Positions 753-34,349 are shown, counted from the stretch's first letter. The stretch: DNA of 40,628 nucleotides from Octopus sinensis (GCF_006345805.1 NW_021835346.1:1-40628), one strand, 5' to 3'. Program-made: numbers and translations. The notes: a model not told the origin generated them from the letters alone.

Positions 753-754
753 TA

Positions 755-10400: not shown

Positions 10401-10429
10401 GGCAACACTCAAAAAAACAATATTTATAT

Positions 10430-11468
10430 TTAGTTTTTTTTCATCATCTTTTGTCGAGTGCGAGTGATCTCAATTCATCCAGATTGTCTCCTGTTTTTAG
10501 ATTTTTTCACAGGATTTAAGTCTTTGTTTAAGGCAGTCATGAATGTCGATTTAAATTGTCCGTGGAATGGTTTGTCGCAACTGTCAAAGTAATTTTTTAT
10601 CGCTTTGTTTTCTGGTGCGTCCGGGTTCATTCTTAGTACATGCCTAAATTACCTATACCACCAATCTATCACATTCTCGAACACATAATTGTAGATACTA
10701 TTAATTAATATTATACGTGGCCAATCTATTAAAGTAAGCTTCTTAGTTATTTTTATGGAACGAATCTAGTTTCAATAGTTTGTTGAAGAGACTTCCTTAT
10801 ATCTCAGCGTTGTAATGCCTGCGTCTGATGTCAATTCTAGGTCTTTTGGCTCTTATCCATCCTTTTCTTTAGTGTGGCCATTGCTTCATTTGCTAGTGTT
10901 TTCCTCTTTAATACATCTTCAGCGTTTTATATTAAATAGACAAGTTTATTAGTACGTCTCCATCTTACATGAGTGATATCGTCTTCTCTTTTGATTTCCG
11001 TAATTTCAGTTTTGATTACATTTACATAGAGAAATCATTTCTCAAGCTCCACTGGTGCATTTTCTAGTAGGTGTTTGAGTGCGGTCAAGTCCCGGGATAC
11101 AAAATCCATAATATGTCTCTTCAATGTCTTCTATAATAGTTTGATTATCCTAACCACGATTCATCCAATATTTGATCAAGAATATTCATTAATTTCTGCC
11201 AGTTTATTGAGTCGAAAGCTCTGGAAGAATCTATTCCCAACATTGTCGTTGCTCTCTTGAATCTTTTGTGGCTCCATACAATGTCTGCCGTAGACCTCTC
11301 TTTTCGGAACCCCTTTGACTTCCTGATAGGTATAGATCCGCCACACCCTTCATTCGAGTTAATGCAATGCTTGCCAGCACCTTAAGTATCGAATTCAGAA
11401 GTATTATCGTGGGGAGATTTTCTACAAAAATCCGACGGTTCTCCACTCCTGGGATCTGCCCTAATTCC
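10430..11468 (-). mobile_element. Degenerate LINE (RTE/RTEX-like) RT and C-terminal remnant, minus strand, copy A
   Basis: ENRRIFVENLPTIILLNSILKVLA...SQRGFRKERSTADIVW...LGIDSSRAFDSI. About 150 bp including the QGD-like motif is deleted relative to copy B. Confidence 0.75.
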
Positions 11469-12024
11469 GTCGGACTGTAGATAGTCTAAGAATTATGAAA
11501 GTTTGTTATTTTTATTATTTATGAATTAATATGAATTCTAAAGCTCAAAATTCAAATAATTAAATATTAGTTTGTAGCCAAATTCTATCTCCTTCTTCAC
11601 TTTGTTTTGTTGAACTTTTTCTTGTTAAAAATCGTTTAGATTAATTAATTCCATTCATTAGCTTTTAATCCCCTTTTGAATGCAATAAAATTTTCAAGTG
11701 AAATTCAAGAATTTAATATTATTCAAATAAAATATTATTTGTTAGATCCCTGTTTTTTCATGTCAGTCACATACATAATCAATATGATCATGAACAAAAA
11801 TTTTATTTACTTATTTGTTTTTATTAATAGTGAACAATTTTTTAGACCAATTCCCGTCAAATATATTTATTTTTTTGCCTATTGATACGTGTACGTGTTA
11901 TTCTAGTCTACTGCAGTAAAAGGTATAATAAACTAAAAATAGCGATTCTAAGAAAAAGACTAATCAGTTTTTATTATCTAAATAACACTTTCATTGAGAT
12001 AAAATTCAAATAAAATCGCACAGT

Positions 12025-14012
12025 TTAATTTGTATCGACCTCTCTACCGTGGTAAGATTTTTTCCGTTTTTTAGCATTCTGTATATGTCGAAACTTCTTA
12101 GGATCAAAGCCATAAGCAAATAGACGGTCATCATTCAACCCACCATTATTACTGATCTTTCTTTTTGTTTTCATATTCTTTTCAGCATTATTTGACTCAT
12201 TCTTGACCAGAGAAGCATCAATAGTGGAATCATGTTGGCCATTTCCAACAGCATCATCAACTTCTTGATTCTGTTCAATCCCTTTCAATGACTTAAATAT
12301 ATGTCGCTTCAGCTTATGTTTTTTCCGTCGTTTCTCGTACATCTTCTTATCATTATACTCCTCTTCATCAGTCCTATACTGAACCATCTTCTTTAAGGAA
12401 ACCCACTGATTCAACTCTTTATAATCCGCATTGAGAATTTCTTCGAGTGATAGACCGAAATCACATTCCGAAACATTTCTATAAGAAAATCTATTTGGAG
12501 GTGGAGGAATTATATCCTCAGGGACCATCATTCGAGTTTTAACAGCTTCTCTACGAAGTGCCCGTTTGCTCTGTAAATTTTCTAACGCTTCATCTTCAGA
12601 AGAAGAAAATTTTGGTTTTTTTTCTTTGAAAGGAATATTATAGAAATTATCACCAAAAATTTCCTAAAATTAGTAAAATGAAACCAAACATTCATTTGTT
12701 GGTCATGTTCTTCTGGATCAAAATCTCCAAACACATGACTCGTGTCAAAATTCTGATTTCCACTGAGAGACCTTAATTTGGATACTTTCGCAGCTTCTTC
12801 TTTCCGCTGAAGACTTCTGAGTCGTTTTAATTCTTCTCTTTTCTTATTTTCCCTTGTTTCTTTCCTCTCCTTTGCTTTCAAACGGGCTTCACTTCGACGG
12901 TGATCCACAGGACGGACAGAATCGGTGATTTTCCGTGGATAAGATTTAATCTGTAAAAGAAATTAATATCATAAATTAAAACTAGTCACAAAATATTCAC
13001 TTAATCTAGCCGCTAATAAACATAACGACAATCATAGAATAGAACGCGCAAAAAAGTATACCTGACAACCGTCTGGTTCTTCAAACCTGAAGTTATAATT
13101 TTTCTCGAATTCATCTTGCTTATCCTCCTCAGCGGAATCAGAGTCAGAAGAATTTAGTTTATATTCAGTATCATTGTCATCCTCATCCACGAGATACTTT
13201 CGATTAAGCAAATAATCTCTCAAAAATTTATCATTTTCAGATATTTTTTCGGACTGCCAATAGTCTCTTAAGGATTCCTACAGTAAACACACTGAGAAAA
13301 CCAGCTGACTGAATTTTCGAGAACAATCTGGACGCTCCGATTTTAGAAATTTTATATATTCTTCGTCATCTTTATTCTAATTTCTTTACTCAAAAATTAA
13401 ACACGGTTTTATCTTGATTTGGCTCTTTTTTGGTCAAAAAATCATCGTCGCTATCATCGACAAATTGTTTAATACTAAAAACAATATTATTAATTTATAG
13501 ACTTTTCCTTTAGTTTATTTTGTTCGTCAACATAGGATCCAGGCACTATTTCCGTCATGTAAGCATCTTGAGGTTCTTCTCCCTTCAAAATACGCCTTCT
13601 TTCGTAATCTTTGAAAAGCAGGGGCTTTTCACGTTTTTTGGTGGGTTTATGTTCATTTCCTTCACTTTTTTGTTTTTCTATGTTAAAAATTAGTTAAAAA
13701 ATAAATTACCGAAAAACTTAAGGTCTTTGTTGTAGAGTTCTGCTGTGGAAAACTTGGCAGTTGCATAAAGTCTCATCCATTCCTCGTCAACTTGTGGAGT
13801 CAATTGTGTGGCACAGTCATCTTCTGTTTCAGAGGATGTTTCATTTTCTGAAGGATTGCCGTAACGATCTTTTACTAGGAGTTTAATTTATGCTTTTATA
13901 TTTTACATTTCTGAAGTTCTTCCTTTTCTCTCCATTGATTGTAATTATTAGCGTACGATTCGTTTATATTTAAGTCTTCTTCATCAGAAATATCGAGATC
14001 GAGTTTACCCAT
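12025..14012 (-). CDS. KRI1: KRI1 homolog (40S ribosome biogenesis factor), multi-exon, copy A
   Basis: MGKLDLDISDEEDLNINESYANNYNQWREKEELQK..., FLRDYLLNRKY, QDEFEKNYNFRFEEPD, FSYRNVSECDFGLSLEEILNADYKELNQWVSLKK (KRI1 and Kri1_C motifs). Confidence 0.9.
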
Positions 14013-14178
14013 TTAATACCACAACATGGAAACTGTTTGAAAATTTTATTGGTAGTTAAATAAAAGTGAAATCATTGTAAATATTTTTAATTTATAACAA
14101 ACATAACTTGAAAATATTTGAAATTAAAAGAAAATTTAAAGACACGTCTAATAAACTACCCTCTGTGATTATGTAGAC

Positions 14179-14227
14179 CAGGGGTTCTCAACCTTTTTAG
14201 CTCAAGGGCCAAATCGATAATTAAGAT
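14179..14227 (+). mobile_element. Isolated 49-bp left end of a hAT (Buster-type) element
   Basis: Identical to 25215-25263 (CAGGGGTTCTCAACC...TTAAGAT). Preceded by ATGTAGAC, an nnnTAnnn target. Confidence 0.85.
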
Positions 14228-15560
14228 GTTCTTCCGAGTTCTTCATAAATTGTCAGGTTTTCGGATTTCTTCTTTCGCGCTAGAATCTTTACCGATGCAT
14301 ACATTTGCGCTTCGTGCTTGTACTTTTTTACTTCTTTTGAAAGGTTTTTTAGCTCTGTTTCGTGGTTTTTCTGACACTTTTTTCATATTTTTCGAATGAT
14401 TTTGTTTTTGCAATTTTGAACTCAATTGCTTTCATTTGGTTGTGAGTGTTTATACAATTGATACGTAGATTTTTTTGTAAATAAGAGAGCTGATCTATTT
14501 CAGGGCCGTGGATTCCTTTGAACGTTTTGGGAATTGTCTCAGTTGTGTGTTTAGTCGCTGCTTTTTTTGTTTACAAGTTCATTTCTTAAAGTTCCTAAAT
14601 TAAGATTAATCGGTTCTATGGCTTGCGATAATTTAGCGGAATAGTTAGTTTTTGAGATAAAATTGTTTCTTAGGAGTTTGACTGGGTATCTAATTTTTTT
14701 GTGTCTGTTTTTGACTTTGTTAATTCAAAATCTCCCCTTTATGAAAAGCTTGATTACCAGCTGTTTATGGTCACTCGATGTTTGCCTCTATATATTTGGG
14801 TATTTGAGAGTAAAGCTTTCTGTGATTGTCAACACAGAAAGTAGTCAATTTGGTTATATATTTTGATTACATGTCTTTCCGAGCTCAGACGTTCTCCATC
14901 CAGGTCGTGATATGAGATGCTGTGTTGAAAATGAATAATTTTTCATTGTTGGTGGAGTTGGCCGTGGTTGCTTCAGACATATTTCTCTGATTTCTTCTAT
15001 TGCTATCCATGAAGGTCAGTTCTTAGGTCCCTTTTCCAACCTGCCCACTCCAATCTCCGCCTTTGTAATGTAGATAGCTCGTGGATATCTCCATAAAGGC
15101 TGTGGATAGTAAACTGTAAAAATCTTTCAGTTCCGTTGGGTTTTAGACGCTTTTGTAGATGTAGGTCCATATACATTTATAATTGTAATTTTATAGTTAG
15201 ATTAAAATTCAAGTTGTATTACGCAAATTCTGTTATTCACTTTTCATATTCCTTTGATATATTCCCTTAGCCCATCGCGTACTGGTGATAGTCCGAACGT
15301 AACAAGATGAAGTAGTGGTAAGCATTTTGTTTGTTAAGTCCTTCTTTAACTTTGGTCTCTTGCAGGTCCGGAGATATTAATGTTGTATCCTTTCAGATCT
15401 TGGCAAAGTGGCCTCTTTTTACCGACGACTTTAACCTTCAAACGTTGAAGGAAGCCTGCGTAAACAGACAGTTTGAGAAGAGTGAAAATGACATTGTGCA
15501 AATTTGAGATGTGTCACCAGCCCCTTTCTCAATTGGTACTCTAAACGTTAGATGACTCAA
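14228..15560 (-). mobile_element. 5' part (APE endonuclease + linker) of a degenerate RTE-like LINE
   Basis: Broken frames give YNINISGLQETK, RICVIQL...ITIINVYGPTS, GDWSGQVG, YNQIDYFLC...SDHKQLV (EEP motifs). 14228-14395 matches 40221-40376. Confidence 0.78.
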
Positions 15561-17064: not shown

Positions 17065-18930
17065 CTAAAGAAATTTAACACTTCTTTCATTAAATTTTAA
17101 CTAACAAATTAGAAAATCAAAGGATACATTTTTATTAGAATTTTCTTCATTTGTCAATTTCGACCGTTTCTTAGATTTGGACTCAACGGCATTGTGTGAC
17201 TAAATTAATAAATACTCAACATTCATTACTTTTGGAGAGGACGGACATATTTTTATACGAATCTTGCAGTCAATGTTGTCACAAGTAACTTTCACAGAAT
17301 CCGACAATAAAGACGAAAAAAAATCACATTTTTCTGAATATTCAAACTTTTTAGGAGCACAATAATTCTAAATAATTGGCATAATTAACAATACATCATT
17401 CTGTAAATAATTCAAAATGACTGGCTCACCAGTTCTGATATAAAACAGTAAATACGGATTTGAATTCATTACAGTATTCAAAGTTATAACTTGAATCTAA
17501 AATTTTAATTTATTGAATTTCTTACATCACGGTCATTTGCCATGTACCAAACATCGGAAGCAGACCGAACATAAGAAAAATAATGTCCTTGTCTAATACC
17601 GCCTCCCTGATGTACAATCACAGCGTAAAGATTATAAAGCTCGGGAGCACCCTTAAAATATTAAAATGGAATATTACAATATTGTCACTCATATATGGTC
17701 TTATATCGAGTGTTTGATCAAAATTAATTTTCTTAGTTACTTTTTGAGAATTACTATTGTCATATGAAAATCTATTTTTTATTTAAAACGATTTAAACTT
17801 TTTTAGCTGGAATGTTAATAAATTCGGAGGCTGGTTGATCGACATTTTTTTGGTAGCAGGAACTGTCTTCTTACATCTATTAGATATTTTATTCAATAAT
17901 TTGGGTTGAATACTAATTAAGTGCATTATTTTTAAAATTCATAAAAATAAGATTAACCTACCGTTCACATGAGTAACTATTCTCTTCACTAAGATGTTCC
18001 TCAGAGAAAAAACTCCTTAGCCCATCAGCGAGAGAAGAATTAAGCTTTGAAATGAATTTTAGTCAAAATACTCGAATATCAGTCGCCAAGTCAAAGAAGG
18101 GGTCGTATGTATTTGAGATAGTTCCGCAAACATCGCAAGCAACTAATGTGATAATGGAAACATGAACACCTCGACTGCAGAGAAATCCACAGAAAATTCT
18201 ATAAATGATGCTTGTTATTTCAGATGATTTTTGCCTAAATTTTATTAATTTTTTGTAAAAATACAAATTTTTGTGTCCAAAAGTACAACATTTATGCATT
18301 TCCTCGAGCAAAAACCTTAGAAATTCGTGAGCATCTTGTTGCTGATTCAAATCAAAATTATGAGCAATTTCTATTAAAATAAAAATACTGATTAAACCAT
18401 GAAGATTTTTGACAATATTTTTTGGAAAAAAAGCATTTCCTTCCATTGTACGGATAAAATGATTTTTCATTTCGCACATTAAACAAAACAAATTCTCTCC
18501 ACGTTTTTTACCTTCAAACTGAGCAAATTAAAAGATAACAATAGTTAAAGTGCGAGTCTGTTTCAAGGTAATTAAACAAAGGCGGAGTGTATCTCAGACA
18601 TTGAAGAACGGAATTAATATAACAAGAGTTCCTCTGATTACATAGACCGACTCCCATTAAATTATCTGTTCGATAAGTCAACAAGACTTCTTCCGGTTTA
18701 CTCAAAACAATATCTTCTGTATTAATTTCAGAGAAAGGTCTTAGAGGAGAATAACTCTGAATAATTTCTTGTAATCGGGGATAATATTTTATCAGTTCCG
18801 AAGTTTCAAAGTCAGGGTCAAGTTTAGAATGCTTAAATTTAATTCTCTTCCAATGTCGATTTTTATCATTCTTGGAAGGTGAAGTAAATGACATATTGTC
18901 CTGTGGAGACTTGAAAGATCGACAGCTCAT
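17065..18930 (-). CDS. Ubiquitin-specific protease, USP36/USP42-like, multi-exon
   Basis: Cys box GLCNQRNSCYINSVLQCLRYTPPLFNYL, QQDAHEFLRFLL, IYRIFCGFLCS, CDVCGTISNTYDPFFDL, His box YNLYAVIVHQGGGIRQGHYFSYV..WYMANDRD, NPYLLFYIR. The 3' exon limit is approximate. Confidence 0.88.
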
Positions 18931-19785: not shown

Positions 19786-19954
19786 TTGCGTATTGTAAAT
19801 TTAATTGCGTATTGTAAATTTAATAATTAAAAACCATAATTATTAATTGATTTCATGCGTTACAATTTTTAATTAACCTTAATAAATTTTTATTTATTTT
19901 TTTATTAATTTGGTTAATAGTTATAAATTTTAAAAAGCAATTGATTTTATTCTG

Positions 19955-22900
19955 ATGTACAAAGTCTGTATTATTGGTTCCGGAAACTGGTGAATTTTTT
20001 GTTTAAATTAATTCTTAGGGGAAGCGCCATATCAGTAGTCATTGGAGAAAACGCTGCCAAAAATGAAATGTTTGACGATACAGTGAACATGTATGTACAC
20101 GAAGAAATAATAAATGGAGAAAAATTATCAGATATTATCAATCAAAAACATGAAAATGTAAAATATTTATTAGGGATAAAACTCCCTACGAACATTGTAA
20201 GCATGTTGTAAATTAAAATTTAGGTCGCAGTGCCGAATTTAGAAAAGACGGTGCGAGACGCAGATATCATTGTGTGGGTAGTACCTCACCAGTTTCTTCG
20301 TGGTCTTTGCACAGCTGCTAAGCCTTATATAAAGCCTACTACAATCAACGTCTCCTGCATCAAGGTTAATTAAATAGGTTATTCTGTTCATTTTGCAGTT
20401 ACTAAACTTATTTTTAGTGTATCATAAACTTATTTTTAGTGTTTCATAAACTTATTTTTAGTGTATCATAAACTTATTTTAGTGTTTCATAAACTTATTT
20501 TTAGTGTATCAGATTTTTTTTTTATTTTATTTTTTTTTTTAATTGTTAAAGTTTTGAAAAGTTATTATATCGAAAGAGAAGAGATTGATTTGAGAAATCA
20601 ATTGAGGAAGCCCGCTGCCTGTATGGAAAGCGAGTTCCCTCGGAGTATGGCTATTCCGATCCTTTGTCTTAGCCATACTCCTTCACGAGGATCATTCTTC
20701 TTTGTGGCGAGCATTCTTCCGAGTTCGCGCAAGAACTCGGCAGTCGCTGGGCCAACTGCTCCTGATGACTCAGCCGCAACAGGGGTGAATCTGTAGCGGT
20801 CCCCGAGGAAGGAATATTTTTTGGTTTTAAGGTTTTCCGCGATTGAGGCAGCTGCTCCAGGTGTCTGAACCGATTTAAGGAGATTCGTGCTTGAGTAAGT
20901 ATCGACGCAAGTTGCGTCCCAGACCAAAGATCGTCCGGAGTTGAAAGGGAAAGAGTCATCCCGTCAGGTCTCTTTCCATCACCTCGATCGAGACCCACTG
21001 GTTCAAGCTGTGCTGGGAAGCCTGCAGCCTTCAGAGCTCTGACGATCACGTCGTTCAGAGCGGCGTGACGTGGTCCTCTTCCGGCGGATCTCCTGCAGGA
21101 TAGCGGGTGCAATCCCTTCGCATCGACCGTTTTCCCGCAGCGGCATCGGTGCTCCTGGCAAACGTCTAGTCCAAGTCTTTGTCCGATTCCAATCCTCAAA
21201 GAATCGTCGTCCAAAAAAGTCCCGAGATTTGGGCAAGGGATTGCACCAAGCCATGCTCCGCTCCCTCCACTTGAGGCTGACACCAGGCAAGCAAGACGAT
21301 GTTGATTTGCTTCTTTTTTAAGCCCTTCTGAAATTTTGGAGCAGACAATGTTATCCCAGTTCCTTTGTTTCGTTGTGTCTTCGGGGATTTTGAGTCCTGA
21401 CCCGTTCCAATCCCGGCAAGCTTCATCAAATGACTCATTCCAGCGAAGTCCAATAGTGTGACGAAGGACTTGCCGTGTCAAATGGTTGCAGCTTGAGAGA
21501 GACGAAAGATATGCCGGGTACGCGACCTCCAGCGCCGATCTTAGACCGACACCCCCAAATCCAGAGGGAAGCTTACATTGCTTCCAACCGAGTTCGTCGA
21601 AGCGGACGTTGATTAGTGACTCAACAGTTTGTTTGAGAGATTTGTCTATCGAAAGTAGACTGTCGTAATGTTCGTGGCAGGGTGAACTTCGCAGTAGGTA
21701 TAAAAGCTTGGGTAGTCCGATGTTGTTTCTCATCAGGAAGAAGGATGTGTGAGAGTCGAGGCATGACAATCTTTTTGCGAGGCGAGATAATTCTTCATTT
21801 TTAGAAAGTAGATGGTTCCTGAGTTCGTCTTCACTGAGTGGACATCCAAGGAAATATAGTTTATCAACTGGCACAGTCGGGATCCCGGGAAGCAGTTCGT
21901 TGAAAAACTCCTTGATAGAGAGAAAGTCGGTGTTTGAGTATGAGACATTTATTAACTCTGATTTGTTAATATTGATGTCCAATCCCAAGTGTTTTAATGC
22001 GGGAAGTGCTTGACGTAAAGAGTTGTATGTTTCCTCGAATGATCCTCCAATTGTGGCATCGTCGAGATACCAGAGATTTAGTTGTGCGTCAATTGATCTC
22101 ACAACATCATCAATTGTCAGGGCAAATAAGAGGGGTCCGAGCGGATCTCCCTGCTGGACACCAGTTTTTGATTTAATGATTTCATCATCAAAAACCAGAG
22201 ACGTATCTTCTCCGTATGACAATTTAACAAGAGGGAAAAGCATGGGAGCCCTCTTCCAACACGTTTCCATAATGGAGTCTCTTCTGAGAGAATTGAATGC
22301 ATTGGTTATGTCCAATTTGATTCCAATGCATTCGTTTGCAGTATTCTTCTGTGTGAAGAAACGCCTTGCCGCATGAACCGCTGCCTCACATCCGTTCTGG
22401 ATACTAACACCCATTTGTTCTGGGAAGAACTCCGCACCGAGTGGGCGGCTCACGAGGGTCGAAGCAATCTTCGCTGCGAGTCTTCTGAAATAGTTTCCGA
22501 CCGCAATGGGGCGGATTCCTCCGTTGGGTTTTTTGAACGCGAGTAGCCTTGCGGAGAAGAGCAATTCTCTGGCATACTCCGGGATGTCGCCATTCACCAT
22601 TTTCCTTATTAGGTCCGTGATCGATTTAACAAGACAGCGTCCTGCTTCCGAGGTGTAGGTGGACGTTAGGTCCTTGATATGGCCGGGGCGTAACCCATCC
22701 AAGCCTCCGCTGCTGCTGGCGGCAAAAGAAGCGATTCCGCGCCGCACTTCTGATTCGGTAATCATAATCTCTTGGGTTCCTTCAGGATTCGAGAACTTTA
22801 CATAATCACTCGGTGCACTTGGGTGCTTCTGAGTTAAGGTATTCAGGACCTCGGGGGTGCTAGACAGCACGGTGTCATCGGACGTGATAACCCGTAGGGC

Positions 22901-24604
22901 TGCCCGCACATCGCCCTCCAGAAGTTTCCGATTCACTCGCTCCTTCAGTTTGTTGGGGGCATCTTTGGTGAATGCTCCTCTGGTTTTGACCGCATTGGCA
23001 ATAAGTGGCTGTTCAAGTATTGCGTGTATGCTATGACTGCCGAAATTCAATATTCTTCCTTTCAGTTTCCCGGTTAAGTTTAGCCGGGGGTTTGTTTCTT
23101 TACTCTGGTTATCAGATTCCGTTGTAGGTGTTCCGAGTGCAACAGGTGCGAAGCATATAAGTTTTAGCCAGGATTCCCAGCTGTCAGAGGACAGTGCGTT
23201 GTCAATGAGGTCTGAAAGGCACGTTGCTGCGGCAATACGTGCTCCTTTTGGATTTTTACTGGGATTTTCCTGGCTTTCCGGAGGTTCGAGATCTTCAAGA
23301 GAATGTGGTCAGTATGTGGTGATGTAAAGTTTGGCTGGGCTGTTGTTTCCCGCCTGGGGACCTCGTTTCCAATACAAGGGGGGCACTGCCAGCTTGACAG
23401 CGTCTCGGCGCAGGCTTTGCTCATTTTTATGCAGCCCAAATGGGCGAATGATTCACATGGCGTGCAGTTAATTCCAAATTTCCTGATATTCGACTGCCCA
23501 CAAAAGAGACATGCCCGAGTTGTCCTCAGTGGCTTTGTTCCTCGTACTTCGTCTTCGCTTCGTTCTTTATTACCATCTGAGGTTTCCGTTAATCACACCA
23601 CAGCACAGCACTTATTAAGATTTTTCTGGCATGACAACCGAAATAGTGTATCATAAACTTATTTTTAGTGTTTCATAAACTTATTTTTAGTGTTTCATAA
23701 ACTTATTTTTAGTGTTTCATAAACTTATTTTTAGTGTATCATAAACTTATTTTAGTGTATCATATTGATTAAAGTTGTTTTATGACATATAATTTTGACG
23801 TACCTAAAATCAATAAATTAGGGCTTTTCTGCCGGAAGTGGGAAAATAACCTTTTTTCAGAATTGATTTATGAAATTGTCGGTTCTGAATGCTATTGTCT
23901 CATGGGAGCTAACTTGGCTTATGAGGTTGCCACTGGTCTTTTTGCGGAATGTACACTCGGATGTGATGACCCCAAAAATGGAAAAATATTGAAATCTTTA
24001 TTCCACACTGATAATTTTAAAATAAATGTAGTTAGTGATAGAATTGCAGTTGAGCTCTGTGGAGCTCTCAAAGTTACTATTTTTAAGTTATTTTTGTAGA
24101 ATATGGTGGCTTTGGCCGCAGGCTTTGCCGATGGCCTGAAATATGGCGGGAATACCAAAGCTGCAATAATCCGACTTGGATTAATTGAAATAATAAAATT
24201 TGTTAAACATTTTGGAGGAGGTTGACAATTCAAAAAAATATTTTCAGGACATCAAACGGAGGTTTTTCTAGAAAGTTGCGGAATCGCGGATTTGGTAACA
24301 ACTTGCTATGGAGGAAGAAATCGATCTTGTTCAGAGAAGTTTGTAATCACTGGGAAGGTTGTATTTTATATAAAACGAAAAATAGAGTTTTGATGAGATT
24401 GAAGAAGAGTTCATGAACGGACAAAAACTTCCCGGCCCACAAGTTGCTAAGGAAGTATTCGAATATTTACAAACTGAAAATTTGCTTGGGAGGTGAGAAA
24501 GGTTCAAACATTTTACTAGTTTTCCTTTGTTCGAAACTATCTACAAAATTTCTATAAAAGAAATCCAACCTCAAGACTTGATTAAATCTCTCAGAAAAAT
24601 GTAG
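19955..24604 (+). CDS. GPD1: Cytosolic NAD-dependent glycerol-3-phosphate dehydrogenase, 8 exons; intron 3 (20365-23821) contains the tandem array and retrotransposon
   Basis: [16 protein letters not shown]...HENVKYL...VPHQF...SCIK|GFSAG...LMGANLA...VELCGALKN...[11 protein letters not shown]...[20 protein letters not shown]...FPLFETIY. One apparent 1-nt homopolymer deletion near 23851. Confidence 0.94.
20404..20511 (+). repeat. Tandem array of 22-bp unit AAACTTATTTTTAGTGT(A/T)TCAT, ~5 units, downstream (3') flank of the retrotransposon
   Basis: Units start at 20404, 20426, 20448, 20470 (21 nt) and 20491 (truncated at ...TAGTGTATCA). The variable base runs A,T,A,T,A. Confidence 0.97.
20512..23643 (-). 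mobile_element. Full-length CRE-clade non-LTR retrotransposon (PHD finger-RT-CCHC-RLE) with poly(A) tail and 10-bp apparent TSD
   Basis: T-rich tail at 20514-20540. TAGTGTATCA at 20502-20511 and 23644-23653. Visibly more GC-rich than the host. One long coding region. Confidence 0.93.
20598..23592 (-). CDS. Retrotransposon polyprotein, ~990-1000 aa after correcting 2-3 one-base homopolymer deletions
   Basis: PHD C4HC3 at 23374-23511; [11 protein letters not shown]...SW..L..FA; RT motifs [27 protein letters not shown]; knuckle [17 protein letters not shown]; RH; [21 protein letters not shown]; KTKKY. Frameshifts at ~23250 (CC for CCC) and ~20951 (TTT for TTTT). Confidence 0.9.
23644..23763 (+). 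repeat. Tandem array of the same 22-bp unit, partial unit + 5 units, upstream (5') flank of the retrotransposon
   Basis: Partial TAGTGTATCAT at 23644-23654, then units at 23655, 23677, 23699, 23721 and 23743 (21 nt). The variable base runs A,T,T,T,A,A. Confidence 0.97.
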
Positions 24605-25999: not shown

Positions 26000-26013
26000 A
26001 TCTAAATGCTGTA

Positions 26014-27576
26014 CAGTCCGACCTCTAAATGGGGCACTAAGTGCCTCAAATCAGAGGTTTCCCCAAAAAAGAGGTTTTTCAAAAAGCTCAATAAATAAAG
26101 AAAAAGAACATTATTTTTTAAAATAATCAGTTAATTTTTCTCCATATTTATATTTATTTTTAATTCCTAACGACACTTTCTTTCTGAATTCATAAAAATC
26201 ATGAAGAGAATCTGGAATCAAATCAAAGATGTTTGTCTCTAATTTTTCCATCAAACTTAAAATTTGTGATATTGATGGTTCGCAGCTTATATTCTCATAG
26301 ATATTTGGATCATTATCTTTTATTTCATCAAAACATTCATCAATAACATTATTAAATATTTCTTCAGATGATTCATTTATGCAACTCGAGTCTGATGGAG
26401 ATTGTCGAAAAACCTTTTGCCAGCAGTTATAAATAATATCCGCAGATACATTATTCCAAGCATCTGAGATTATTGTTACCACTTGCCGCAAATTTAATTT
26501 GGATAAAGACTCTATAAACAAATCCTGGTCGTCTTGAAAACATAAAAAATCAATTAGACAATTCAAATAATTATCCTTGAAATTTTTAATGATTCCAGCA
26601 TCCAATGGTTGAAGTATTGGTGTCGTATTTTTGGTAAAAATAAAAAATCAACGTTGCTAAATGTCGATATTTTGTGGCAAGCACGTTATCTAATAACATT
26701 AAGATTTTTCTTTTTTGAATAATCATTTTTTCATTAATTTTTTGAGCCAGGATATAAAAATGTCTCTTGTCATCCACGCATTTTTGGACGAAGAGTATAA
26801 AATTCCATAAATTTCGGGAGAAAATTTTTTGAAACATCTAGGATTTCTATATTTTCCGATTATTAGGTTCAAATTTTTCTCCAGTGTAACTACAGCATAG
26901 ATGAAGAGTAACTTTATCATTACTCCTTTTAAAGCCCCGTGCCGAATCACCAGTTTTCACGAATGATTTACGTGGGGTAAGTTTGATAAAAGAGAAGTTT
27001 CGTCACAATTAAAAATGTTCTCCTTTTCATATTGTTCAACTTTGATATTTAATTCTGATAAAAAATTCAAAATTATCGCATGATCAGCAGATGCGGATTC
27101 GCCTGACAATGTTCGGAATTTTAATTCATGCTCTGCTTGAATTTTTATAACCATCCATTTGAAGCTTTAAACTTGTTTAAGCCCATTCTCGAAGAAACAG
27201 TTAGGGAAATTTTTTTTAAAAGAGTTCCAGAAACTGGAACATTCTGATCCCTTAGACGCTGAAAAATATCGAGGACTTTTTCATCAAATCCGTTTTTATT
27301 TTCACTTAATGACGAGGAAAGAAATCCTTTTTTGATAAATGGAAGAATATTCTTTTTTATACGAAAAATAGTTCCCTTGCTAGTATTGTACATTATGGAT
27401 AATCTCCTCTCAGAATGTTCCTTCTTTAAAAGATGATCAGCAATCTTCAACTTGGTTTCATAATTCAAAGGCATTACACAAGAAATTTGAAATGAAACGT
27501 GTCTTAAAATATTTATTTTTTAAATTGGTATAATTAATTTTATTTAATAAAAAATCAATGCCCCAAATAGAGATGT
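26014..27576 (-). mobile_element. pogo/Tigger transposon, copy B, full transposase span with frameshifts
   Basis: ATG at 27474 (MPLNYETKLKIA...; psq and CENP-B-type HTH, NVPVSGTLLK, ASNGWL), then DETSL, LLDN, QPLDAGIIKNFK, ending TDYFKK* at 26111. TA|CAGTCCGACC TIR. Eroded opposite TIR at 27557-27575. Confidence 0.9.
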
Positions 27577-28499
27577 TAAAATTAATTGATTTTTTATAAT
27601 TTGGTTAAAAAAATTTAATTAAACTGTTAATGCTTAACTGTTTCTTTTTTAAACATTCTGGCGGTTTTTAAATCCTGAAAATACACTTATAATTTCAATT
27701 CAAATCGTCCTGCGTTTTGCCAGCACTTGGGTGTTTTGCCTCAAAGATGGTAAAAATATCGATGGTCTTAAACAATTATTTCCAGGGTTGTTTCGCCTGA
27801 AACTAGAATTTCGAACATATTTTACTTTTGTCAATGGCCTGCTCGTCTATTCGATTCACTTAATGCCAGGCAACTTTTGTTTCCTGTTAATCTGGTGGCC
27901 CTTAATTTGATGGTAAATTAGGAGGCTACCAGCCAATGTCTTTCCTAAACTGAGTCAGGAATTCATGCGTTTAAAATTGGATTTAGGGACCAAAAGAGCG
28001 TGTGAATTTCCTTTTCATAATATTCGCTTTAAAAAAGTCGAACCCGCCGATTTTTTTCTTTTTCCTGAAGCTTGACTTTTTTTACGCTTTCAACTGGGTT
28101 AGGGGAGGTCAAAATCACTTCGAAACGTTATCCTGAGTTACTCACAATCATTTTGCTGTGTATGGGCTACTAAGTTATCTTTTATTTTCTAGTCAAATTG
28201 TCATTTCGGTATCTGGAATTCAGCAGACTGATCCACTGGGACCCTTACTTTGTGCCATTTGGGAGTGCATCAGGATCACGTGACGTTTTTTCGGTTTTTA
28301 CCGTGGTCTTAATGTTTGAATAATAATTTCTGTGAATTGCATTGCTCGTAGTCTATTATTGCTAATAGATTATTAATACTTTAACTATGTTACTCTTAAT
28401 GGATTCATCAATCGCGTCGACGCTGACAAAATTGTTTCAGGTTTTACAAATTCTCTGTTCTTCATTGTGCTGGCGAGCCGGTGATTGTCTTTTTGCCAT

Positions 28500-29220
28500 T
28501 GACGGTGCGATCTTGGACACGCTTGCTTGATCTTAAACATCAAGTTCGTGGGTAACAGTCAGGTCCATACAAGCTTATCGGTCCATTCTGGAGAAATTGT
28601 GCTCCGCATCTTTGCCGTATTACCTTTTTTATTTTTCTTTTTTTACAAATAACCTTTGTTCTTTCACACTTTTTCAAAGATGTCAAGGTTACGGGATACC
28701 CAGAAGTGTTAGAGTCATAGAGTTCCTGCAGGTATCGGGTGGTGGAAAAGATCTCAATTTATACAGGTTTGGACCAATGCGTCAGTAATCATCTTTTTAT
28801 AAAAGTAAGATTACCAGTTTGAGCTGGCATCATTTGCTTCCTTTTTCTAACCGCACTCATTTAATTGGCTTGACACTTACGGGGTCTCCTCAGCGGCATC
28901 ATTACTTTCTAATCAGTGTTTGTCAAAGGTTTAGTATTAAAAATTGTCACCATATCCGGCTGCTAGGTTTATGTACAGAACGCACTACCTCTCATGCCGC
29001 ATGAGTGCCGGCAGAATCCCGCGTCCCGCAACCATGTTGTAGAAATGACTTTCTACTAATTCCCCGCTGATCATAAAACACACTGGAATTAACAGATGCA
29101 ATCAAAAACCTCCAAATAGAATGACTATGTTTTCTTTCCATGGGGAAAATCTCATGTCTAGGCCGTTAGGTACGCCAACATCTTTTCAGAATTCATGTTA
29201 ACTTTGTCTACAACCGATGT
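28500..29220 (-). pseudogene. Heavily degenerate PIF1-type (Helitron-like) helicase remnant, copy B
   Basis: Same motif fragments as 3750-4450. Confidence 0.35.
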
Positions 29221-29455
29221 CCGACAATCATGTTCTATTACTAAAACTTAAAAAAATCGAAATACAGCAATATCCGAAATAAAGTAAAATCCGTTCCATT
29301 TGAGTCTGTAAGTAATGGTTTCATCGGTAAGAAAAAATTCAGCATGATAATTTTGAAACGCACACTATAGAAAATAAAACTTTGTAAATAAAGTAACAAA
29401 GGAACTCAAATCAAATTAAAAAGAAAAATAATTCAAATATACGTAAATAAAAAAA

Positions 29456-29528
29456 CGCCCATACTCGGATTCGAACCAAGAACCTTGTGGTTAACAGCCA
29501 CACGCGCTAACCGTTGCGCCATATGGGC
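29456..29528 (-). tRNA. tRNA-Asn(GTT), copy B
   Basis: Same cloverleaf as 4703-4775 with one D-stem difference (GCGC here, GTGC in copy A). Oligo(T) terminator follows. Confidence 0.96.
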
Positions 29529-31789
29529 TTGTACACCTTCGTGTTCTATATATTAGACTCAACTATCTCTGTAATAACATGTGAAAAGTCTACGTTCTCT
29601 ATTCTTCACAAGTGAATGAACGGACTATCTTATAATGAAAACAAATGACACTTTTGTTTATGTGTAGCAATTTTAAAAGCCGAAAATTTAAAGTAAATTC
29701 AGCTAGCTAAAATTGAAGAATTCTTTATGAAAGATCTTAAACTAATAATATTTCAAGATGCACAATAAAATTGTGACGTGCTTTTTTTTTTTTTTCTTTT
29801 ACGAATTTCGTCTAAAGATCAAAAAGAATTAAGACTTATTCTGTGCAATTGTAGTAACTCATGAATGTTTTGAAATAGGAGTGTAAACTTTAATAAAAAC
29901 AGAGACGATAATACGATACAAAAACCTGATTTATTTGTGTAAGACTAAAAGATCAGTAACATGTTTCTCGTTCACGTTTAAGTAACTTCTGCGGACATTT
30001 TACAACAAGTGGAGTTGAAAAAATTAAGAAAAATCGATCTACTCTAGAAAGAACTAAAAATACGTCACGCAAAAGTGAAGATTATGTCAAATGTTCTACA
30101 CAAATAAATTTGTGACACTTCATTTTCTGAAGTATGCTGAATCATTAAATATAGCCTGAGGACATATGTGTATGTGCAATTTTTGTCACTGACGAAAACG
30201 TTAAAAAGCATTGCTGTTACAAGAAGAAACAAACCCGAGCCATAAAGACAATTCCTTTAGGAGATCTATGTTAAATCTGACACATTTCCGGAAACCTTTC
30301 AATAATCCTTAATTTTGTATATTAATTATATTTTTATTATTTATTTGAATTAGTTTCAAAATAAATTTCTTCGGTACTAACATTTACTACAAGTAAGTAT
30401 TTGTATCACTAAATAATTTTGCCGTAAATTAATATCAATAGGTGGTCAAGAACCCTTTGGTATCTCTTGTGGTCCTGGGTTGGATCCTTAGCGGCTGGTA
30501 GCTCCGATCGAGTTTGACAAGTAAAGCCGTTATTGACGTCTCATCACACATGGAGTCTGCATGGAACGGATTTTTGGATGGAATGTTGAGCTTCCTACCG
30601 TTTAATAACAACTGCACTACAATAAAAGGAACATAAGACAAAAACTTCCTACCTCGGAAAAAATTAAAAATAATTTACTTTCTTATTCTTTTCTTAAACT
30701 TATATGGCTGTCACAAGCTAAACCATATACAAATGACAAACCATATACAATATATCAAATGACAAGTCGCTTTTTCGTCCCATGTCAATTAATAATAACG
30801 TGTTAAATTTAAAATATTTGTTTTTGTATGAAAAATATAAAAATTATTATAATGTTATGGTACATGACAAAAATTATTATAATGTTATGGTACATGACAA
30901 TTTGTATCACCAAACCAGTAATCTCGTAAAATCAAATAATTTTTTAAATAGTTAAAGAAAGTAAATTTGAATTTGGATGTAAAAAATTAAGTCATAAAAA
31001 TGGATATTTGTGAAAATGGAGTTATATTTTAACTAAATTTACGAGTATTATAATGTTTTGGTACAGACTGTACACTGTTTACTGGTATATGGTATTTCAA
31101 ACCAATAAAACAAAATTTATTTCATAGATATATTTATTTCTTCTAGATATATTTATTTCTTCTAACAAAATTTATTTCTTCTAATTTGATAAAATAATCT
31201 AATTTATTTTTATACAATTCGACAAACTTGTTTCTTTGTTTTTTACTTATATTATGACAAAGGTGGATGATTCGGGAAATTTTAACATGTTTTTTATTTT
31301 TCTTCTCTATCTCATCAAGCTCCTCTTTTGATCTTATGATTTCGGTTGCTGATGAAATAATAAAACCTATTGTAATTTTTTCTAGGTTAGAAATGATTTA
31401 AAATGTTATTCATGGCAATATTGAGGAAGCAAGTGTTATGGAAAGAATTTACTCTGATTAGGCTGTCAAACAATTTCAAATAAACAATCCTAGACTCGTT
31501 TTAGCTTAACATTTGATTGAGTTAGAAAGCCTGACCAAATTATGTAACATGAACTGTTTGTATGAAAGTTTGAGAATAAGTTTGTTGTATTTTTCACAAA
31601 ATTAATTTCTAAGAAAATTAATATTTGAAAGGAGTTCTGATTACGAAAGTCAACCCTAACAACTTAACAGTTTAGAAAAGGAAAATGGGATTATTGATAA
31701 ACTTTGTTTATAACTCGAATATCAGAAATGAAAATAATTTGATTTTTATTGTATATAAATTAAATTCTTAATAGATATATTGTGAGATC

Positions 31790-33129
31790 ATGTTTTATCC
31801 ATGTTAGTTGTTATTTAATAATTTTAAGCACCTCATCATCCTATTAGGCCTGTAATTCTTACAGCTGCTATCGGAAATGAACTAAAATTTTTAACTAATG
31901 GAAAGCCTTATTGTCTATTAAGAGTCATCAATCAACCTATAATCAACCTTCCAATTAAAATTTTAATAAATTCAAACTTTAATGGTATTTTTATACCAGT
32001 TTATTGCTCAGATATTATTATTGCTTGCTATGAAAGTGAGAGCAGTGAGATTTTCGAAAATATACATTCCGAGTTTCAGAAAACCACTTTTACTATGTTC
32101 ACTGTTCCCGACAACATTATTTCTGCAGTAAATATTCTGCTCGAAATCAATTCGAAATTTCCTAAAAATCAAATTCTGCTTCTTCCTTGCGACATTTTTG
32201 GAGATTTGGATATTGTATCATTCATTGTCGACCATTTGACACACAATCCTACAATTTCAATGATTAGAGTGCCCCGACCTGAAGTAAATAAAATATCACT
32301 TCCTGCTCCCCACAAATATCGGAAACCAGAATTAGAAATTTGCTGTGTTGATTCTGTCGAACAAAAACATTTGATTATGTTTTGTGGTCAAACAAAATTC
32401 TTTGAAGACGAAATGGTTCTCAAAAAACAATATCTTTGTCGGTAATGATTTATCTCTATGATTTAGAACTCATTCCATACTCACTTTAGTTTCTCATGTT
32501 GACCCTCAGGTTTACATTTTTTCGGTTCCTTGTCTTGACCTGATTCGTAGAAAATTTAGGTATTTTTTAGTCTTAATATATGAATTAAAATTTAGTCATT
32601 CGTTTTGTATAAAATCAGAATTGCTACCACAAATTCTCGATTTTATGGCAAATTTCGATCCAAAAGAATTTCCTGGCACGTACAGTTGGATTCGTGCTCT
32701 CCCTTTAAATGCTGATATATTCAGAATATCATCCATTTTCAACTATCTCAGGGCTCATAGATCTAATTTTGTGTCAAGTTCACAGTAATAAGTCTATTAA
32801 CATTGTATTAGGAATTGTGTTTACGAAAATACTTTTTTGGGACCCGACTGTGTAGTGGGTGATGTGAGTCGACTGATTTGCTGCATTGTTGGTAGCAATG
32901 TTAGAATAGGCTCAAAGTATCCGTGTCTGATGTATATTCCAGTTGTATGTTGGATAATTGCATTATTTCTGATCATGTCAATATTGGGGATGGTTGTCAG
33001 ATACGTAATTCTGTGATTTTTCCTGGTCAGACTCTGGACAGTAACTGTATAGTTTATATTTTTAAATTATAAGCTGTTAAATGCAACGATGTTATTGGTG
33101 AAGTTATTGATGACGTGCTTTTTAGATAA
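31790..33129 (+). CDS. EIF2B3: eIF2B gamma subunit, copy B
   Basis: Homologous to 7081-8415. The middle exons read in frame here (YIFSVPCLDLIR, IKSELLPQILDFMANFDPKEFPG). Confidence 0.82.
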
Positions 33130-33266
33130 TCATTAATTTTTTTAATTTTATTTTTTCAATTTTGTAATATTTTATTTGATAATAAATTATTATTTTGTTT
33201 GATATCTGGTTGGTACTAAAGTCTTTTTTGTATCATTAAATAAACTACATTTAATTTATAGAATAA

Positions 33267-34005
33267 ATGACAACTGCTGGGCGCCCCACTTTTGATCATG
33301 CTAAAGGAAGCGGTTCTCGGATGGAGAATGATCTTGGTTCTCTGACGAGACAATTTTCCGCCAGAGACCTACCAAGTCAATTAAAGCTAAAATTTCGGTA
33401 TTGTACAAATAATTAACAAATATTAGTCAAAAAGGCCAATCTTGCAAAGAAGATTTGAAATCTATTGACATGAAACAAGTATTAGAAGAGAAGGAATTAT
33501 TCCACAAACATAAAATTGATGGCCAATTGGAAGAAACTCTTGGCACTGAGAAGAGGCTAAAGTTGGAAGATGTGAATTTGGACGAAGATGATCCCATTGA
33601 CGAGGGTGGGATTGATTCAGACGATTCCTCTGACGGAGATGAAACAGCACAGTTAATGTCAGAACTTAATAAAATAAAAAAAGAACGAATGGAAGAGGCC
33701 AAGAAAATGGTTTAATAAAATTTGATCACTGTTTACAGAACATGGAGAAAGAGCTTGAGGAGCAGAAAATAAGGAATGAAAATATAATGCGGGGAAATCC
33801 CCTCATTTCACTTTCAGGCGATTTGGAAGGGAAAAGTGATTTTAGAGTCAAGGCAAAGTATTTGTGATTGTGTTATTTTAGATGGGATGATGACGTGGTT
33901 TTTAAAAATTGTGCAAAAGAGACAAATAAAACAAAGCCCGAATTCATTAATGATTGTATTCGCTCGGAATTCCACAAGAAATTCATGTCGAAATATTTTA
34001 AATAA
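33267..34005 (+). CDS. CWC15: CWC15, copy B
   Basis: Same exon structure and translation as copy A. Confidence 0.95.
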
Positions 34006-34349
34006 TTTTTGTTTCTGATTTTTAAAATTTAATGATCTCTTTACTCATTAAATCAATTTCTAAGAATTTAATAAAAAAATTAAAGACCATTCATGTTTCT
34101 TTGACTTTTTAATACCCTCCATAAGAGGCGTTCTCAGGTTTGAGTCAATTTGGATCTCTGCTCTATATTATGCTGTAAAATGGAAAAAACAATTTAAACG
34201 ATGTACTTTTACAATTTTTGGAATTATTGAAAAGTAAAGCTCGGAGAGGAAAACTGTCCCAGCCATTATGCCGTCAGGAAGTTAGTTTATAATTATGACA
34301 AGTATCCGGGTCCCGTGAACAATGTGTTGGTTAAGAACGATTAGCTGAG

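What the first reader, a model, noticed from the sequence alone, without database searches (positions are those of the whole stretch)
20404..23763. Near-intact CRE-clade retrotransposon inserted at a defined position within a 22-bp tandem array: candidate new minisatellite-targeting family
Seen: the element is flanked on both sides by ~5 units of AAACTTATTTTTAGTGT(A/T)TCAT in the same orientation. Its poly(A) end abuts ...TAGTGTATCA and its 5' end abuts TAGTGTATCAT..., giving a 10-bp duplication (modulo 22) at a fixed register. Known: CRE-clade RLE elements are often sequence-specific. CRE1/SLACS/CZAR target spliced-leader arrays, and MoTeR and Cnl1 target telomeric repeats. Inference: this unit is not a telomere repeat, rDNA or any target I recognise, so it may be an undescribed target specificity. 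The array occurs nowhere else in the window.
Basis: partly seen in the sequence, partly recalled or inferred. Interest (0 to 1): 0.8.

Follow-up and report, generated by a model that had tools for sequence, protein, structure and literature searches.

The report
PHD-finger LINE copy inside an intronic minisatellite
One full-length copy of an R2-like retrotransposon sits in a 22-bp repeat array in a gene intron, but its closest multi-copy relatives insert at scattered sites, so this one copy does not show that the family targets the repeat.

Summary
A 3,132-bp element lies on the minus strand at 20512-23643 (GC 48%, host 32%). It splits a seamless 10-unit, 22-bp array inside an intron of a GPDH gene. 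It has an A-rich tail and a perfect 10-bp target-site duplication, TAGTGTATCA.

It encodes one protein: PHD finger, reverse transcriptase, CCHC knuckle and restriction-like endonuclease (RLE). As assembled the reading frame is broken by two single-base frameshifts, and no in-frame ATG lies before the PHD finger. The architecture is R2-like, but CRE-clade membership could not be tested and the N-terminus is not CRE-like.

No second copy of this family or of the 22-mer could be reached. Three multi-copy relative families insert in unrelated sequences with 9-16 bp duplications. The closest of them is 47-50% identical in protein. A neighbouring subclade does sit in (TAA)n microsatellites.

The array is therefore most likely where this one copy landed, not proof of a dedicated specificity. 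I put true specificity at about 0.2. This is a new member of a known kind, of modest interest.

The parts
20403..20511 (+). Left block of the 22-bp minisatellite (5.0 units). It lies on the 3' side of the element.
   Evidence: Tandem Repeats Finder; pattern search.
20502..20511 (+). Target-site duplication, left copy: TAGTGTATCA. Its 3' end is the inferred first-strand nick (TCA^TAAAC on the + strand).
   Evidence: Identical to 23644-23653.
20512..23643 (-). The retrotransposon: 3,132 bp, GC 0.48 against 0.32 in the local host DNA.
20512..20597 (-). 86-nt 3' UTR. It ends in an interrupted A-rich tail (20514-20541) followed by a terminal TC (20512-20513).
20598..20963 (-). C-terminal part of the RLE in the third reading frame. 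It carries the WDATC motif (20907-20921), the K-KY motif and the TGA stop (20598-20600).
   Evidence: 47% identical to residues 853-962 of P0001.
20940..20959 (-). Frameshift 2: a single-base length difference at a short T/C homopolymer, between the RPD and WD motifs of the RLE.
20672..23308 (-). Main open frame of 879 codons. It holds the RT (RVT_1; YLDD at 22055-22069), the thumb/linker, the CCHC knuckle (CRCG..H..C) and the RPDG motif (20960-20971).
   Evidence: Pfam E=5.9e-18.
23238..23265 (-). Frameshift 1: a single-base length difference beside short A/C runs, between the PHD region and the conserved IPKGAR motif.
23374..23514 (-). N-terminal PHD-type zinc finger (C4HC3: C-x2-C-x11-C-x2-C-x4-H-x2-C-x15-C-x2-C). 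No in-frame ATG lies upstream of it.
   Evidence: Pfam PHD E=5.2e-5, 23.6 bits against a cut-off of 24. A family profile hits the PHD fingers of BPTF, PHF2 and CFP1 in the PDB.
23554..23643 (-). 5' end of the element. It carries a terminal motif (TTTC...CAGAAAAATCTTA...TAAGTGCTG) shared with relative families, so the copy is complete at its 5' end.
   Evidence: Alignment A2.
23644..23653 (+). Target-site duplication, right copy: TAGTGTATCA.
23644..23764 (+). Right block of the 22-bp minisatellite (5.5 units). It lies on the 5' side of the element.
20224..20364 (+). Host GPDH exon upstream of the intron that holds the array.
   Evidence: The concatenated exons hit animal GPDH at up to 55% identity.
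23822..24075 (+). Host GPDH exon downstream of the intron. The exact acceptor site is uncertain.

Best explanation
**What it is.** This is one copy of a single-ORF non-LTR retrotransposon with R2-like architecture: PHD finger, reverse transcriptase, CCHC knuckle and a PD-(D/E)XK restriction-like endonuclease.

**How it got there (inferred from the anatomy).**
- The endonuclease nicked the window's + strand after ...TAGTGTATCA.
- The freed 3'-OH primed reverse transcription from the A-rich RNA tail.
- The other strand was cut 10 bp away, which produced the 10-bp duplication.
- The copy is full-length at both ends. It lies antisense in a GPDH intron, where it is probably harmless.

**Why the array.** The 22-bp array existed before the insertion and is simply where this copy landed. 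The lineage as a whole selects dispersed, AT-rich sites and makes 9-16 bp duplications. Its N-terminal module is a PHD finger, a histone-tail reader type, not a sequence-reading Myb or C2H2 module. The array location is therefore most likely incidental, or at most reflects a loose preference for AT-rich or repeat DNA. It does not indicate a dedicated minisatellite specificity.

**State of the copy.** As assembled it is inactive: two frameshifts and no start codon.
For: **Anatomy and junctions.**

**Domains.**
- RVT_1, E=5.9e-18.
- PHD finger.
- RT profile matches R2 best, E=2.9e-19.
- The AlphaFold model of the intact relative P0001 (pLDDT 87.7) aligns over about 890-990 columns with R2 cryo-EM structures. 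E=2e-24, TM 0.5-0.6, better than LINE-1 ORF2p.

**Dispersed insertion in relatives.**
- Family C: 97-98% identical copies in one assembly, 47-50% protein identity to the window element, and its neighbour in a rough tree.
- Its duplications are TTTTGTAGAAC, AATTTAACC, AATTGATCAAT, ATTAATTGCAT and ATTTTTAACCGT, all in different non-repeat DNA.
- Family A1: at least 5 independent copies with unrelated flanks, and only L042 lies in an array.
- Family B: 7 copies with variable 5' truncation and unrelated flanks.
- The five closest single-copy relatives (L001-L005) share no sequence between their two flanks.
Against: - No second copy of this particular family was available, so its own behaviour is unknown.
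- Landing inside the only sizeable array in the window has a naive chance of 1-2%.
- The neighbouring subclade is associated with (TAA)n. L008 and L016 are flanked on both sides. L007, L012 and L019 have it on the 3' side.
- RLE elements are often target-specific (PMC4640811).
- Specificity can differ between related families, as in Utopia (PMC4640811).
- Two of about 16 copies in the 'dispersed' relative families touch tandem repeats (L042, L087). This hints at some repeat bias.
Confidence: 0.55

Rival explanations
1. **Dedicated minisatellite targeting.** The family recognises the 22-bp unit AAACTTATTTTTAGTGTWTCAT and always nicks at TCA^TAAAC. Copies would then accumulate in such arrays at a fixed register, as Dong does in (TAA)n or R2 in 28S rDNA.
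For: - The insertion is clean and in register, in the middle of a 10-unit array, with a perfect 10-bp duplication.
- Chance of hitting an array in this window is about 1-2%.
- A neighbouring subclade is flanked by (TAA)n.
- Most RLE clades are target-specific, and microsatellite-specific families are known (PMC4640811, PMC3636483).
Against: - There is only one copy, and the case was selected because it lies in an array.
- The closest multi-copy relative (family C) and two further families are dispersed.
- One copy of dispersed family A1 sits in an array by itself (L042).
- The N-terminal module is a PHD finger, not a DNA-sequence reader.
- The RNA 3' end (…A(n)UC) has no homology to the target.
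- The 22-mer was found nowhere else: not in the window, the 91 fetched loci, the JGI metagenome contigs or the GTDB genome contigs.
Confidence: 0.2
2. **Chromatin-guided insertion.** The PHD finger tethers the retrotransposition complex to histone H3 tails, for example H3K4 methylation states near the 5' ends of active genes. Site choice would then be regional, and the local sequence, here an array about 0.5-1 kb into a housekeeping gene, would be incidental.
For: - A PHD finger is conserved at the N-terminus across the window element and families C, A1 and A2. Many database relatives also carry it (PF00628 precomputed).
- The profile's best PDB matches are H3K4me-reading PHD fingers: BPTF, PHF2 and CFP1.
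- Relatives insert at sites with no shared sequence.
- The window copy lies in an early intron of GPDH.
Against: - No histone binding was tested.
- The window copy has F-A-H where H3K4me3 readers usually have W-[FY]-H. Relatives such as P0015 do keep WFH.
- The genomic context of the relatives' insertions relative to genes was not analysed.
- PHD-like fingers can also have other roles.
Confidence: 0.15
3. **General bias toward simple or tandem repeats.** DNA structure, AT-richness or break-prone repeats, rather than a specific sequence, would make arrays of many kinds favoured landing sites for this lineage.
For: - Among relatives with both flanks available, L008 and L016 lie in (TAA)n and L042 in a degenerate AACCT-type array.
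- Several others have a microsatellite 60-300 bp after the ORF: L007, L012, L019, L020, L067, L069 and L073.
- L087 carries a 23-bp x3 repeat at its 5' junction.
Against: - Many 3' microsatellites may be the elements' own tails rather than targets.
- Most copies with resolved duplications in families C and A1 lie in non-repeat DNA.
- The L087 repeat contains element sequence, so it arose at or after insertion.
Confidence: 0.1

Closest known systems
R2 (28S rDNA-specific, RLE-bearing non-LTR retrotransposon; cryo-EM structures 8GH6, 9NL2, 9NL3, 9DOU)
   Same: - A single ORF with RT, then linker, CCHC knuckle and C-terminal PD-(D/E)XK endonuclease.
- The model of an intact relative aligns end-to-end with R2 structures.
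- R2 is the best PDB match by sequence.
- Hallmarks of target-primed reverse transcription.
   Different: - Only distant in sequence: E=7e-9, and over the RT only.
- No Myb or C2H2 N-terminal DNA-binding module. A PHD finger takes its place.
- The target is not rDNA.
- It makes a 10-bp target duplication, whereas most R2 elements make target deletions (PMC3636483).
CRE clade (CRE1/CRE2, SLACS, CZAR; relatives MoTeR, Cnl1)
   Same: - RLE-bearing, with a single ORF.
- Forms target-site duplications, as all known CRE elements do (PMC3636483).
- Inserted in a tandemly repeated sequence.
   Different: - The target is not a spliced-leader gene or a telomere repeat (sequence).
- The N-terminus is a PHD finger, not C2H2 (own knowledge of CRE).
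- RT phylogeny against CRE references could not be run.
R4 clade / Dong ((TAA)n-specific) and other microsatellite-specific RLE elements (Togen in (TG)n; some HERO families)
   Same: - RLE element inserted in a tandem repeat with a duplication.
- A neighbouring subclade of the window element (L008, L016, L007, L019) is associated with (TAA)n, exactly like Dong (PMC3636483, PMC4640811).
   Different: - The repeat here is a 22-bp minisatellite, not a microsatellite.
- Specificity of this family is unproven.
- Its nearest multi-copy relative is dispersed.
- Relationship to Dong and R4 was not tested by phylogeny.
HERO / YURE-type RLE elements without strict target specificity
   Same: Known RLE elements that insert at non-specific sites include HEROFr, HEROTn, HERODr, YURECi and EhRLE3 (PMC3636483). 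Families A1, B and C, examined here, behave the same way.
   Different: Membership was not tested. As far as I know, a PHD finger has not been described for these elements.

Membership tests
RLE-bearing (R2-group) non-LTR retrotransposons | Reverse transcriptase domain with a Y/FxDD catalytic motif | tested here: met
   Pfam RVT_1, E=5.9e-18. YLDD at window 22055-22069.
RLE-bearing (R2-group) non-LTR retrotransposons | C-terminal CCHC knuckle followed by a PD-(D/E)XK restriction-like endonuclease, with no APE domain | tested here: met
   - Motifs CRCG..H..C, RPDG, WDATC and K-KY are all present.
- They are invariant across 24 homologs.
- The model of intact relative P0001 aligns over its whole length with R2 structures.
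- No APE hit in Pfam.
RLE-bearing (R2-group) non-LTR retrotransposons | Hallmarks of target-primed reverse transcription: 3' A-rich tail, target-site alteration, no terminal repeats | tested here: met
   A-rich tail at 20514-20541, a 10-bp duplication, and a seamless reconstructed empty site.
CRE clade | RT-domain phylogeny groups the element with CRE1/CRE2/SLACS/CZAR | not testable with these tools
   No CRE reference sequences were reachable. Database hits carry no transposon names, and the PDB holds only R2.
CRE clade | N-terminal C2H2-type zinc finger(s) (from my own knowledge of CRE/SLACS/CZAR) | tested here: not met
   The N-terminus is a C4HC3 PHD finger.
CRE clade | Insertion into spliced-leader genes (or telomere repeats for MoTeR and Cnl1) | tested here: not met
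   The array has no Rfam match at E<=10. The unit is not a telomere-type repeat (read from the sequence).
CRE clade | Makes target-site duplications | tested here: met
   A 10-bp duplication. PMC3636483 states that all known CRE and R4 elements make duplications, so this feature does not separate the two.
R2 clade | N-terminal zinc finger(s) plus Myb, and insertion at the conserved 28S rDNA site | tested here: not met
   No Myb or C2H2 hit. The target is an intronic minisatellite. Sequence similarity to R2 is confined to the RT.
Target-specific (site-specific) retrotransposon family | Independent copies of the same family flanked by the same target sequence at the same position | not testable with these tools
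   - There is one copy in the window.
- No protein above 50% identity exists in the database.
- No hits for the array or the element's 3' UTR in metagenome or genome contigs.
- In relatives the feature was tested and not met for families A1, B and C.
R4 / Dong-like microsatellite-specific elements | Flanked on both sides by the target microsatellite, (TAA)n for Dong | tested here: not met
   The window element is flanked by a 22-bp unit, not (TAA)n. Relatives L008 and L016 do meet the feature. Phylogeny against Dong and R4 was not testable.

The most novel reading that the evidence does not exclude
This family, unlike its dispersed relatives, has evolved recognition of the 22-bp unit itself and always cuts at TCA^TAAAC. 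That would make it a minisatellite-specific LINE inside a PHD-finger lineage that switches between dispersed, (TAA)n-specific and minisatellite-specific targeting. It would add a new target class, and a natural set of related proteins for learning how RLE elements change specificity.
Probability: 0.2. Interest if true: 0.5.

Novelty: new member of a known kind. Interest (0 to 1): 0.27.

Why it matters
RLE-bearing LINEs are being mined as tools for site-specific DNA insertion, so every new natural target specificity is of practical interest. If this family really read a 22-bp minisatellite, it would widen the known target range beyond RNA genes, microsatellites and telomeres.

What was actually shown is more modest:
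- A widespread animal lineage of R2-like elements carries a PHD finger in place of the DNA-reading N-terminal module.
- In the three multi-copy families examined, this lineage inserts at scattered sites.
- A neighbouring subclade is associated with (TAA)n.

This makes the lineage a reasonable place to study how N-terminal module swaps relate to target choice. It also gives a caution: a single array-flanked copy does not establish specificity.

Tried and rejected
1. **More copies of the family or the 22-mer.** None in the rest of the window. None in JGI metagenome contigs, GTDB genome contigs or the 91 fetched loci. No protein above 50% identity in the 5.8-billion-protein database.
2. **Array derived from a multicopy RNA gene (spliced leader, U2, tRNA, rRNA).** No Rfam match at E<=10. 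Rejected.
3. **Array as part of a MITE or other transposon.** No inverted repeats flank it. Rejected.
4. **Array created by the insertion.** Rejected. At least 5 units lie on each side, the tail lies between the element and the array, and no unit-like sequence occurs inside the element.
5. **HDV-like ribozyme or other RNA family at the 5' end.** No Rfam hit in 20200-24000.
6. **The 945-bp insert at 1790-2735 as a second, truncated copy in non-array DNA.** This would have refuted specificity, but there is no protein similarity, so it is a different family.
7. **Host identification from GPDH.** The best hit is only about 55% identical, so the host remains unidentified.
8. **Clade assignment from the literature or supplementary files.** No usable reference protein sequences were found.
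9. **The host USP gene at 18063-18930 as part of the element.** Some relatives do fuse a USP domain after the RLE. Rejected here: GPDH exons on the opposite strand lie between, and the composition is host-like.
10. **3' boundaries of single-copy relatives L001, L003, L004 and L005.** Their boundaries could not be fixed, so only the test for sequence shared between the two flanks was used.
Full report
**1. What is in the sequence**

The region was read directly. On the + strand, a 22-bp tandem array (unit TAAACTTATTTTTAGTGT[A/T]TCA) runs from 20403 to 20511. It is followed by 'GA', a T-rich run (20514-20541) and about 3.1 kb of DNA at GC 0.48. The surrounding host DNA is at GC 0.32. The same array resumes at 23644 and runs to 23764.

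The 22-mer occurs eight times in the window, all in these two blocks, against 0 expected from shuffles. The left block ends ...TAGTGTATCA and the right block begins TAGTGTATCA.... Deleting 20512-23653 gives a seamless array of 10.1 units with 95% matches.

So a pre-existing intronic minisatellite of about 220 bp was split in its fifth unit by a minus-strand element (20512-23643) with a perfect 10-bp target-site duplication. A 32-bp duplication would require two mismatches at the A/T variant position.

The array lies between two exons of a glycerol-3-phosphate dehydrogenase gene on the + strand. The element is antisense to that gene.

**2. Anatomy of the element**

The coding capacity on the minus strand is spread over three reading frames. 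A blastx comparison with the intact 968-residue relative P0001 covers its residues 9-962. Identity is 47% in the RT and RLE segments and 35% in the N-terminal segment.

That comparison needs exactly two frame changes and shows no other stop codons. The frame changes lie within 23238-23265 and 20940-20959. Both are single-base length differences at short homopolymers, so they could be real mutations or assembly errors. No in-frame ATG lies upstream of the first zinc-finger cysteine.

| Feature | Window coordinates | Evidence |
|---|---|---|
| PHD-type C4HC3 finger | 23374-23514 | Pfam PHD E=5.2e-5, just under the cut-off; a 24-sequence family profile hits the PHD fingers of BPTF, PHF2 and CFP1 |
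| Reverse transcriptase, YLDD motif | 22055-22069 | RVT_1 E=5.9e-18 |
| CCHC knuckle (CRCG..H..C) | within the main frame | |
| Endonuclease motif RPDG | 20960-20971 | |
| Endonuclease motif WDATC | 20907-20921 | |
| K-KY motif and TGA stop | stop at 20598-20600 | |
| 3' UTR, A-rich tail, terminal TC | 20512-20597 (86 nt) | |

The first 50 nt share a terminal motif (TTTC...CAGAAAWATCTTA...TAAGTGCTG) with two relative families. The copy is therefore complete at its 5' end.

An AlphaFold model of P0001 (pLDDT 87.7, pTM 0.82) aligns over about 890-990 columns with the cryo-EM structures of R2 proteins. E is 2e-24 and TM 0.5-0.6, clearly better than LINE-1 ORF2p. The element is thus an RLE-bearing, R2-architecture non-LTR retrotransposon with a PHD finger where R2 has its Myb and zinc-finger DNA-binding module.

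**3. Which clade?**

By sequence, R2 is only a distant relative: E=7e-9, over the RT only. No CRE, R4, HERO or NeSL reference sequences could be reached, because database hits carry no transposon names and the papers consulted held no usable sequences.

According to PMC3636483, all known CRE and R4 elements make target duplications, whereas NeSL and most R2 elements make deletions. The 10-bp duplication therefore fits CRE or R4 but does not separate them. The PHD finger and the non-spliced-leader target do not fit classical CRE. 'CRE-clade' remains an untested label.

**4. Is the family minisatellite-specific?**

The direct test needs other copies of this family, and none could be found:
- none in the rest of the window;
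- no protein above 50% identity in the protein database;
- no match to the array in JGI metagenome contigs or in GTDB genome contigs;
- no match to the element's 3' UTR in GTDB genome contigs.

The host itself is absent from the database. Its GPDH is at most 55% identical to any animal protein.

I therefore examined relatives. I fetched 91 loci. For each I compared the DNA upstream and downstream of the ORF, with the window as positive control. I then resolved the junctions in the multi-copy families.

| Family | Loci | Identity between copies | Protein identity to window element | Insertion sites |
|---|---|---|---|---|
| C (one long-read assembly) | L002, L086-L091 | 97-98% | 47-50% | Five copies with resolved duplications, each in different non-repetitive AT-rich DNA |
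| A1 | L024, L041, L042/L044, L043, L059, L066 | about 88-91% | about 32% | Unrelated flanks; only L042 lies in a degenerate AACCT-type array |
| B | L046, L050, L051, L053, L061, L062, L080 | 97-99.7% | about 29% | Variable 5' truncation, unrelated flanks |

- **Family C** is the closest multi-copy relative and the window element's neighbour in a rough NJ tree. Its five duplications are TTTTGTAGAAC, AATTTAACC, AATTGATCAAT, ATTAATTGCAT and ATTTTTAACCGT.
- **Family A1** junctions are. L041 has a duplication of about 16 bp.
- **Family B** junctions are.

Duplication lengths of 9-16 bp in the relatives match the window's 10 bp.

On the other side, a neighbouring subclade is associated with (TAA)n, as Dong is. 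L008 and L016 are flanked on both sides. L007, L012 and L019 have the repeat on the 3' side. The lineage therefore contains both behaviours.

The L042 case shows that a dispersed family can place one copy in an array. N-terminal modules are swapped often in the lineage: PHD, a CxC-rich module, and other zinc motifs.

**5. Most likely explanation**

Shown:
- a complete copy, frame-broken as assembled, of a PHD-RT-CCHC-RLE retrotransposon;
- an A-rich tail and a 10-bp duplication;
- insertion into a pre-existing 22-bp array in a GPDH intron.

Inferred:
- first-strand nick on the + strand at TCA^TAAAC;
- reverse transcription primed from the A-rich tail, whose last two bases, TC, are either templated or added;
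- second-strand cut 10 bp away.

Because the nearest multi-copy relatives are dispersed and the N-terminal module is a histone-reader type, I judge the array location to be incidental or the result of a loose preference (0.55).

Rivals:
- true 22-mer specificity (0.2);
- PHD-guided regional targeting near the 5' ends of active genes (0.15, which overlaps with the main explanation);
- a general bias toward tandem repeats (0.1).

The naive 1-2% chance of hitting an array cannot be taken at face value, because the case was selected for lying in an array.

**6. Novelty and verdict**

RLE elements that insert in tandem repeats are known: Dong in (TAA)n, Togen in (TG)n, some HERO families, and YURE in U2-derived satellites (PMC4640811, PMC3636483). 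Non-specific RLE elements are also known.

This is a new family of a known kind, in an unidentified, fast-evolving animal genome. The claim of a new minisatellite-targeting family is not refuted. It rests on one copy and gets no support from the closest available proxies. Interest is modest at 0.27. It would rise to about 0.5 if a survey of the source genome showed fixed-register insertions in the 22-bp array.

Noticed in passing
window 753-14379 and 26012-40373: A large segmental duplication at 96-98.7% identity flanks the unique GPDH/USP region. It includes tRNA-Asn(GTT) genes at 4703-4775 and 29456-29528, and KRI1-like and NTP-transferase-like host ORFs. It could be a true tandem duplication or uncollapsed haplotypes.
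   Followed up: partly
window 852-1298, 26111-26605, 27145-27474: Fragments of a pogo/Tigger-like DNA transposon (DDE_1 and the HTH_Tnp_Tc5 DNA-binding domain) lie at the start of both duplication copies. The two copies are arranged differently.
   Followed up: partly
window 1790-2735 (against 27457-27507 in the other copy): Copy 1 holds 945 bp where copy 2 has about 50 bp. The insert carries an ORF (2258-2587) with a PD...ExK...KY-like motif. It looks like a 5'-truncated fragment of a second RLE-type retroelement, unrelated to the main one and sitting in non-array DNA. There is no protein similarity to the main element and no Pfam hit.
   Followed up: partly
window 18063-18930 (-); proteins P0013, P0016, P0074, P0085: Exons of a host ubiquitin-specific protease gene lie just downstream of the element. 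Separately, some database relatives of the element carry a USP domain, and in P0013 the sequence shows it fused after the endonuclease. Others carry an OTU domain. Here the proximity looks coincidental, but protease capture in this lineage is notable.
   Followed up: partly
window 19945-24600 (GPDH gene): - Host introns are about 27 nt. The one holding the array is about 315 bp without the element.
- GC is 32%, and GPDH is at most 55% identical to any animal protein in the database.
- This fits an unidentified, fast-evolving animal with tiny introns, reminiscent of dicyemids (D. japonicum: mean intron 38 bp, GC 36.7%; PMC6736024).
- The nearest named relatives of the element are Octopus sinensis proteins, and dicyemids live in cephalopods.
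- Host-parasite transfer is a lead only.
   Followed up: partly
window 23554-23643 (-); L042:255-350; L066:5630-5725; L086:3706-3800; L089:3868-3962: A 5'-terminal motif (TTTC(T)ATTT..AAGTTTCAGAAATATCTTA..TAAGTGCTG) is shared by families that are only 32-50% identical in protein. This suggests a functional 5' UTR element, such as a promoter or an RNA signal.
   Followed up: partly
L087:3850-3945 and 6510-6560: A 5'-truncated family C copy has a 23-bp unit repeated three times at its 5' junction. The unit consists of the target duplication plus the first bases of the truncated element. Small tandem arrays can therefore be generated at 5' junctions in this lineage.
   Followed up: no
L008, L016 (both flanks); L007, L012, L019 (3' flank): A subclade neighbouring the window element is flanked by (TAA)n microsatellites, the target known for Dong. 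L007 and L008 carry a CxC-rich N-terminal module instead of a PHD finger, but the dispersed family B has the same module.
   Followed up: partly
L042:198-254 and 3987-4122 (same locus as L044): One copy of the otherwise dispersed family A1 is embedded in a degenerate AACCT/AAACCC telomere-like array. L024 has a TTAGG-like array about 1 kb upstream in the opposite orientation.
   Followed up: no
window 40395-40461: A (TGTC)n / 12-bp microsatellite lies at the end of the window.
   Followed up: no
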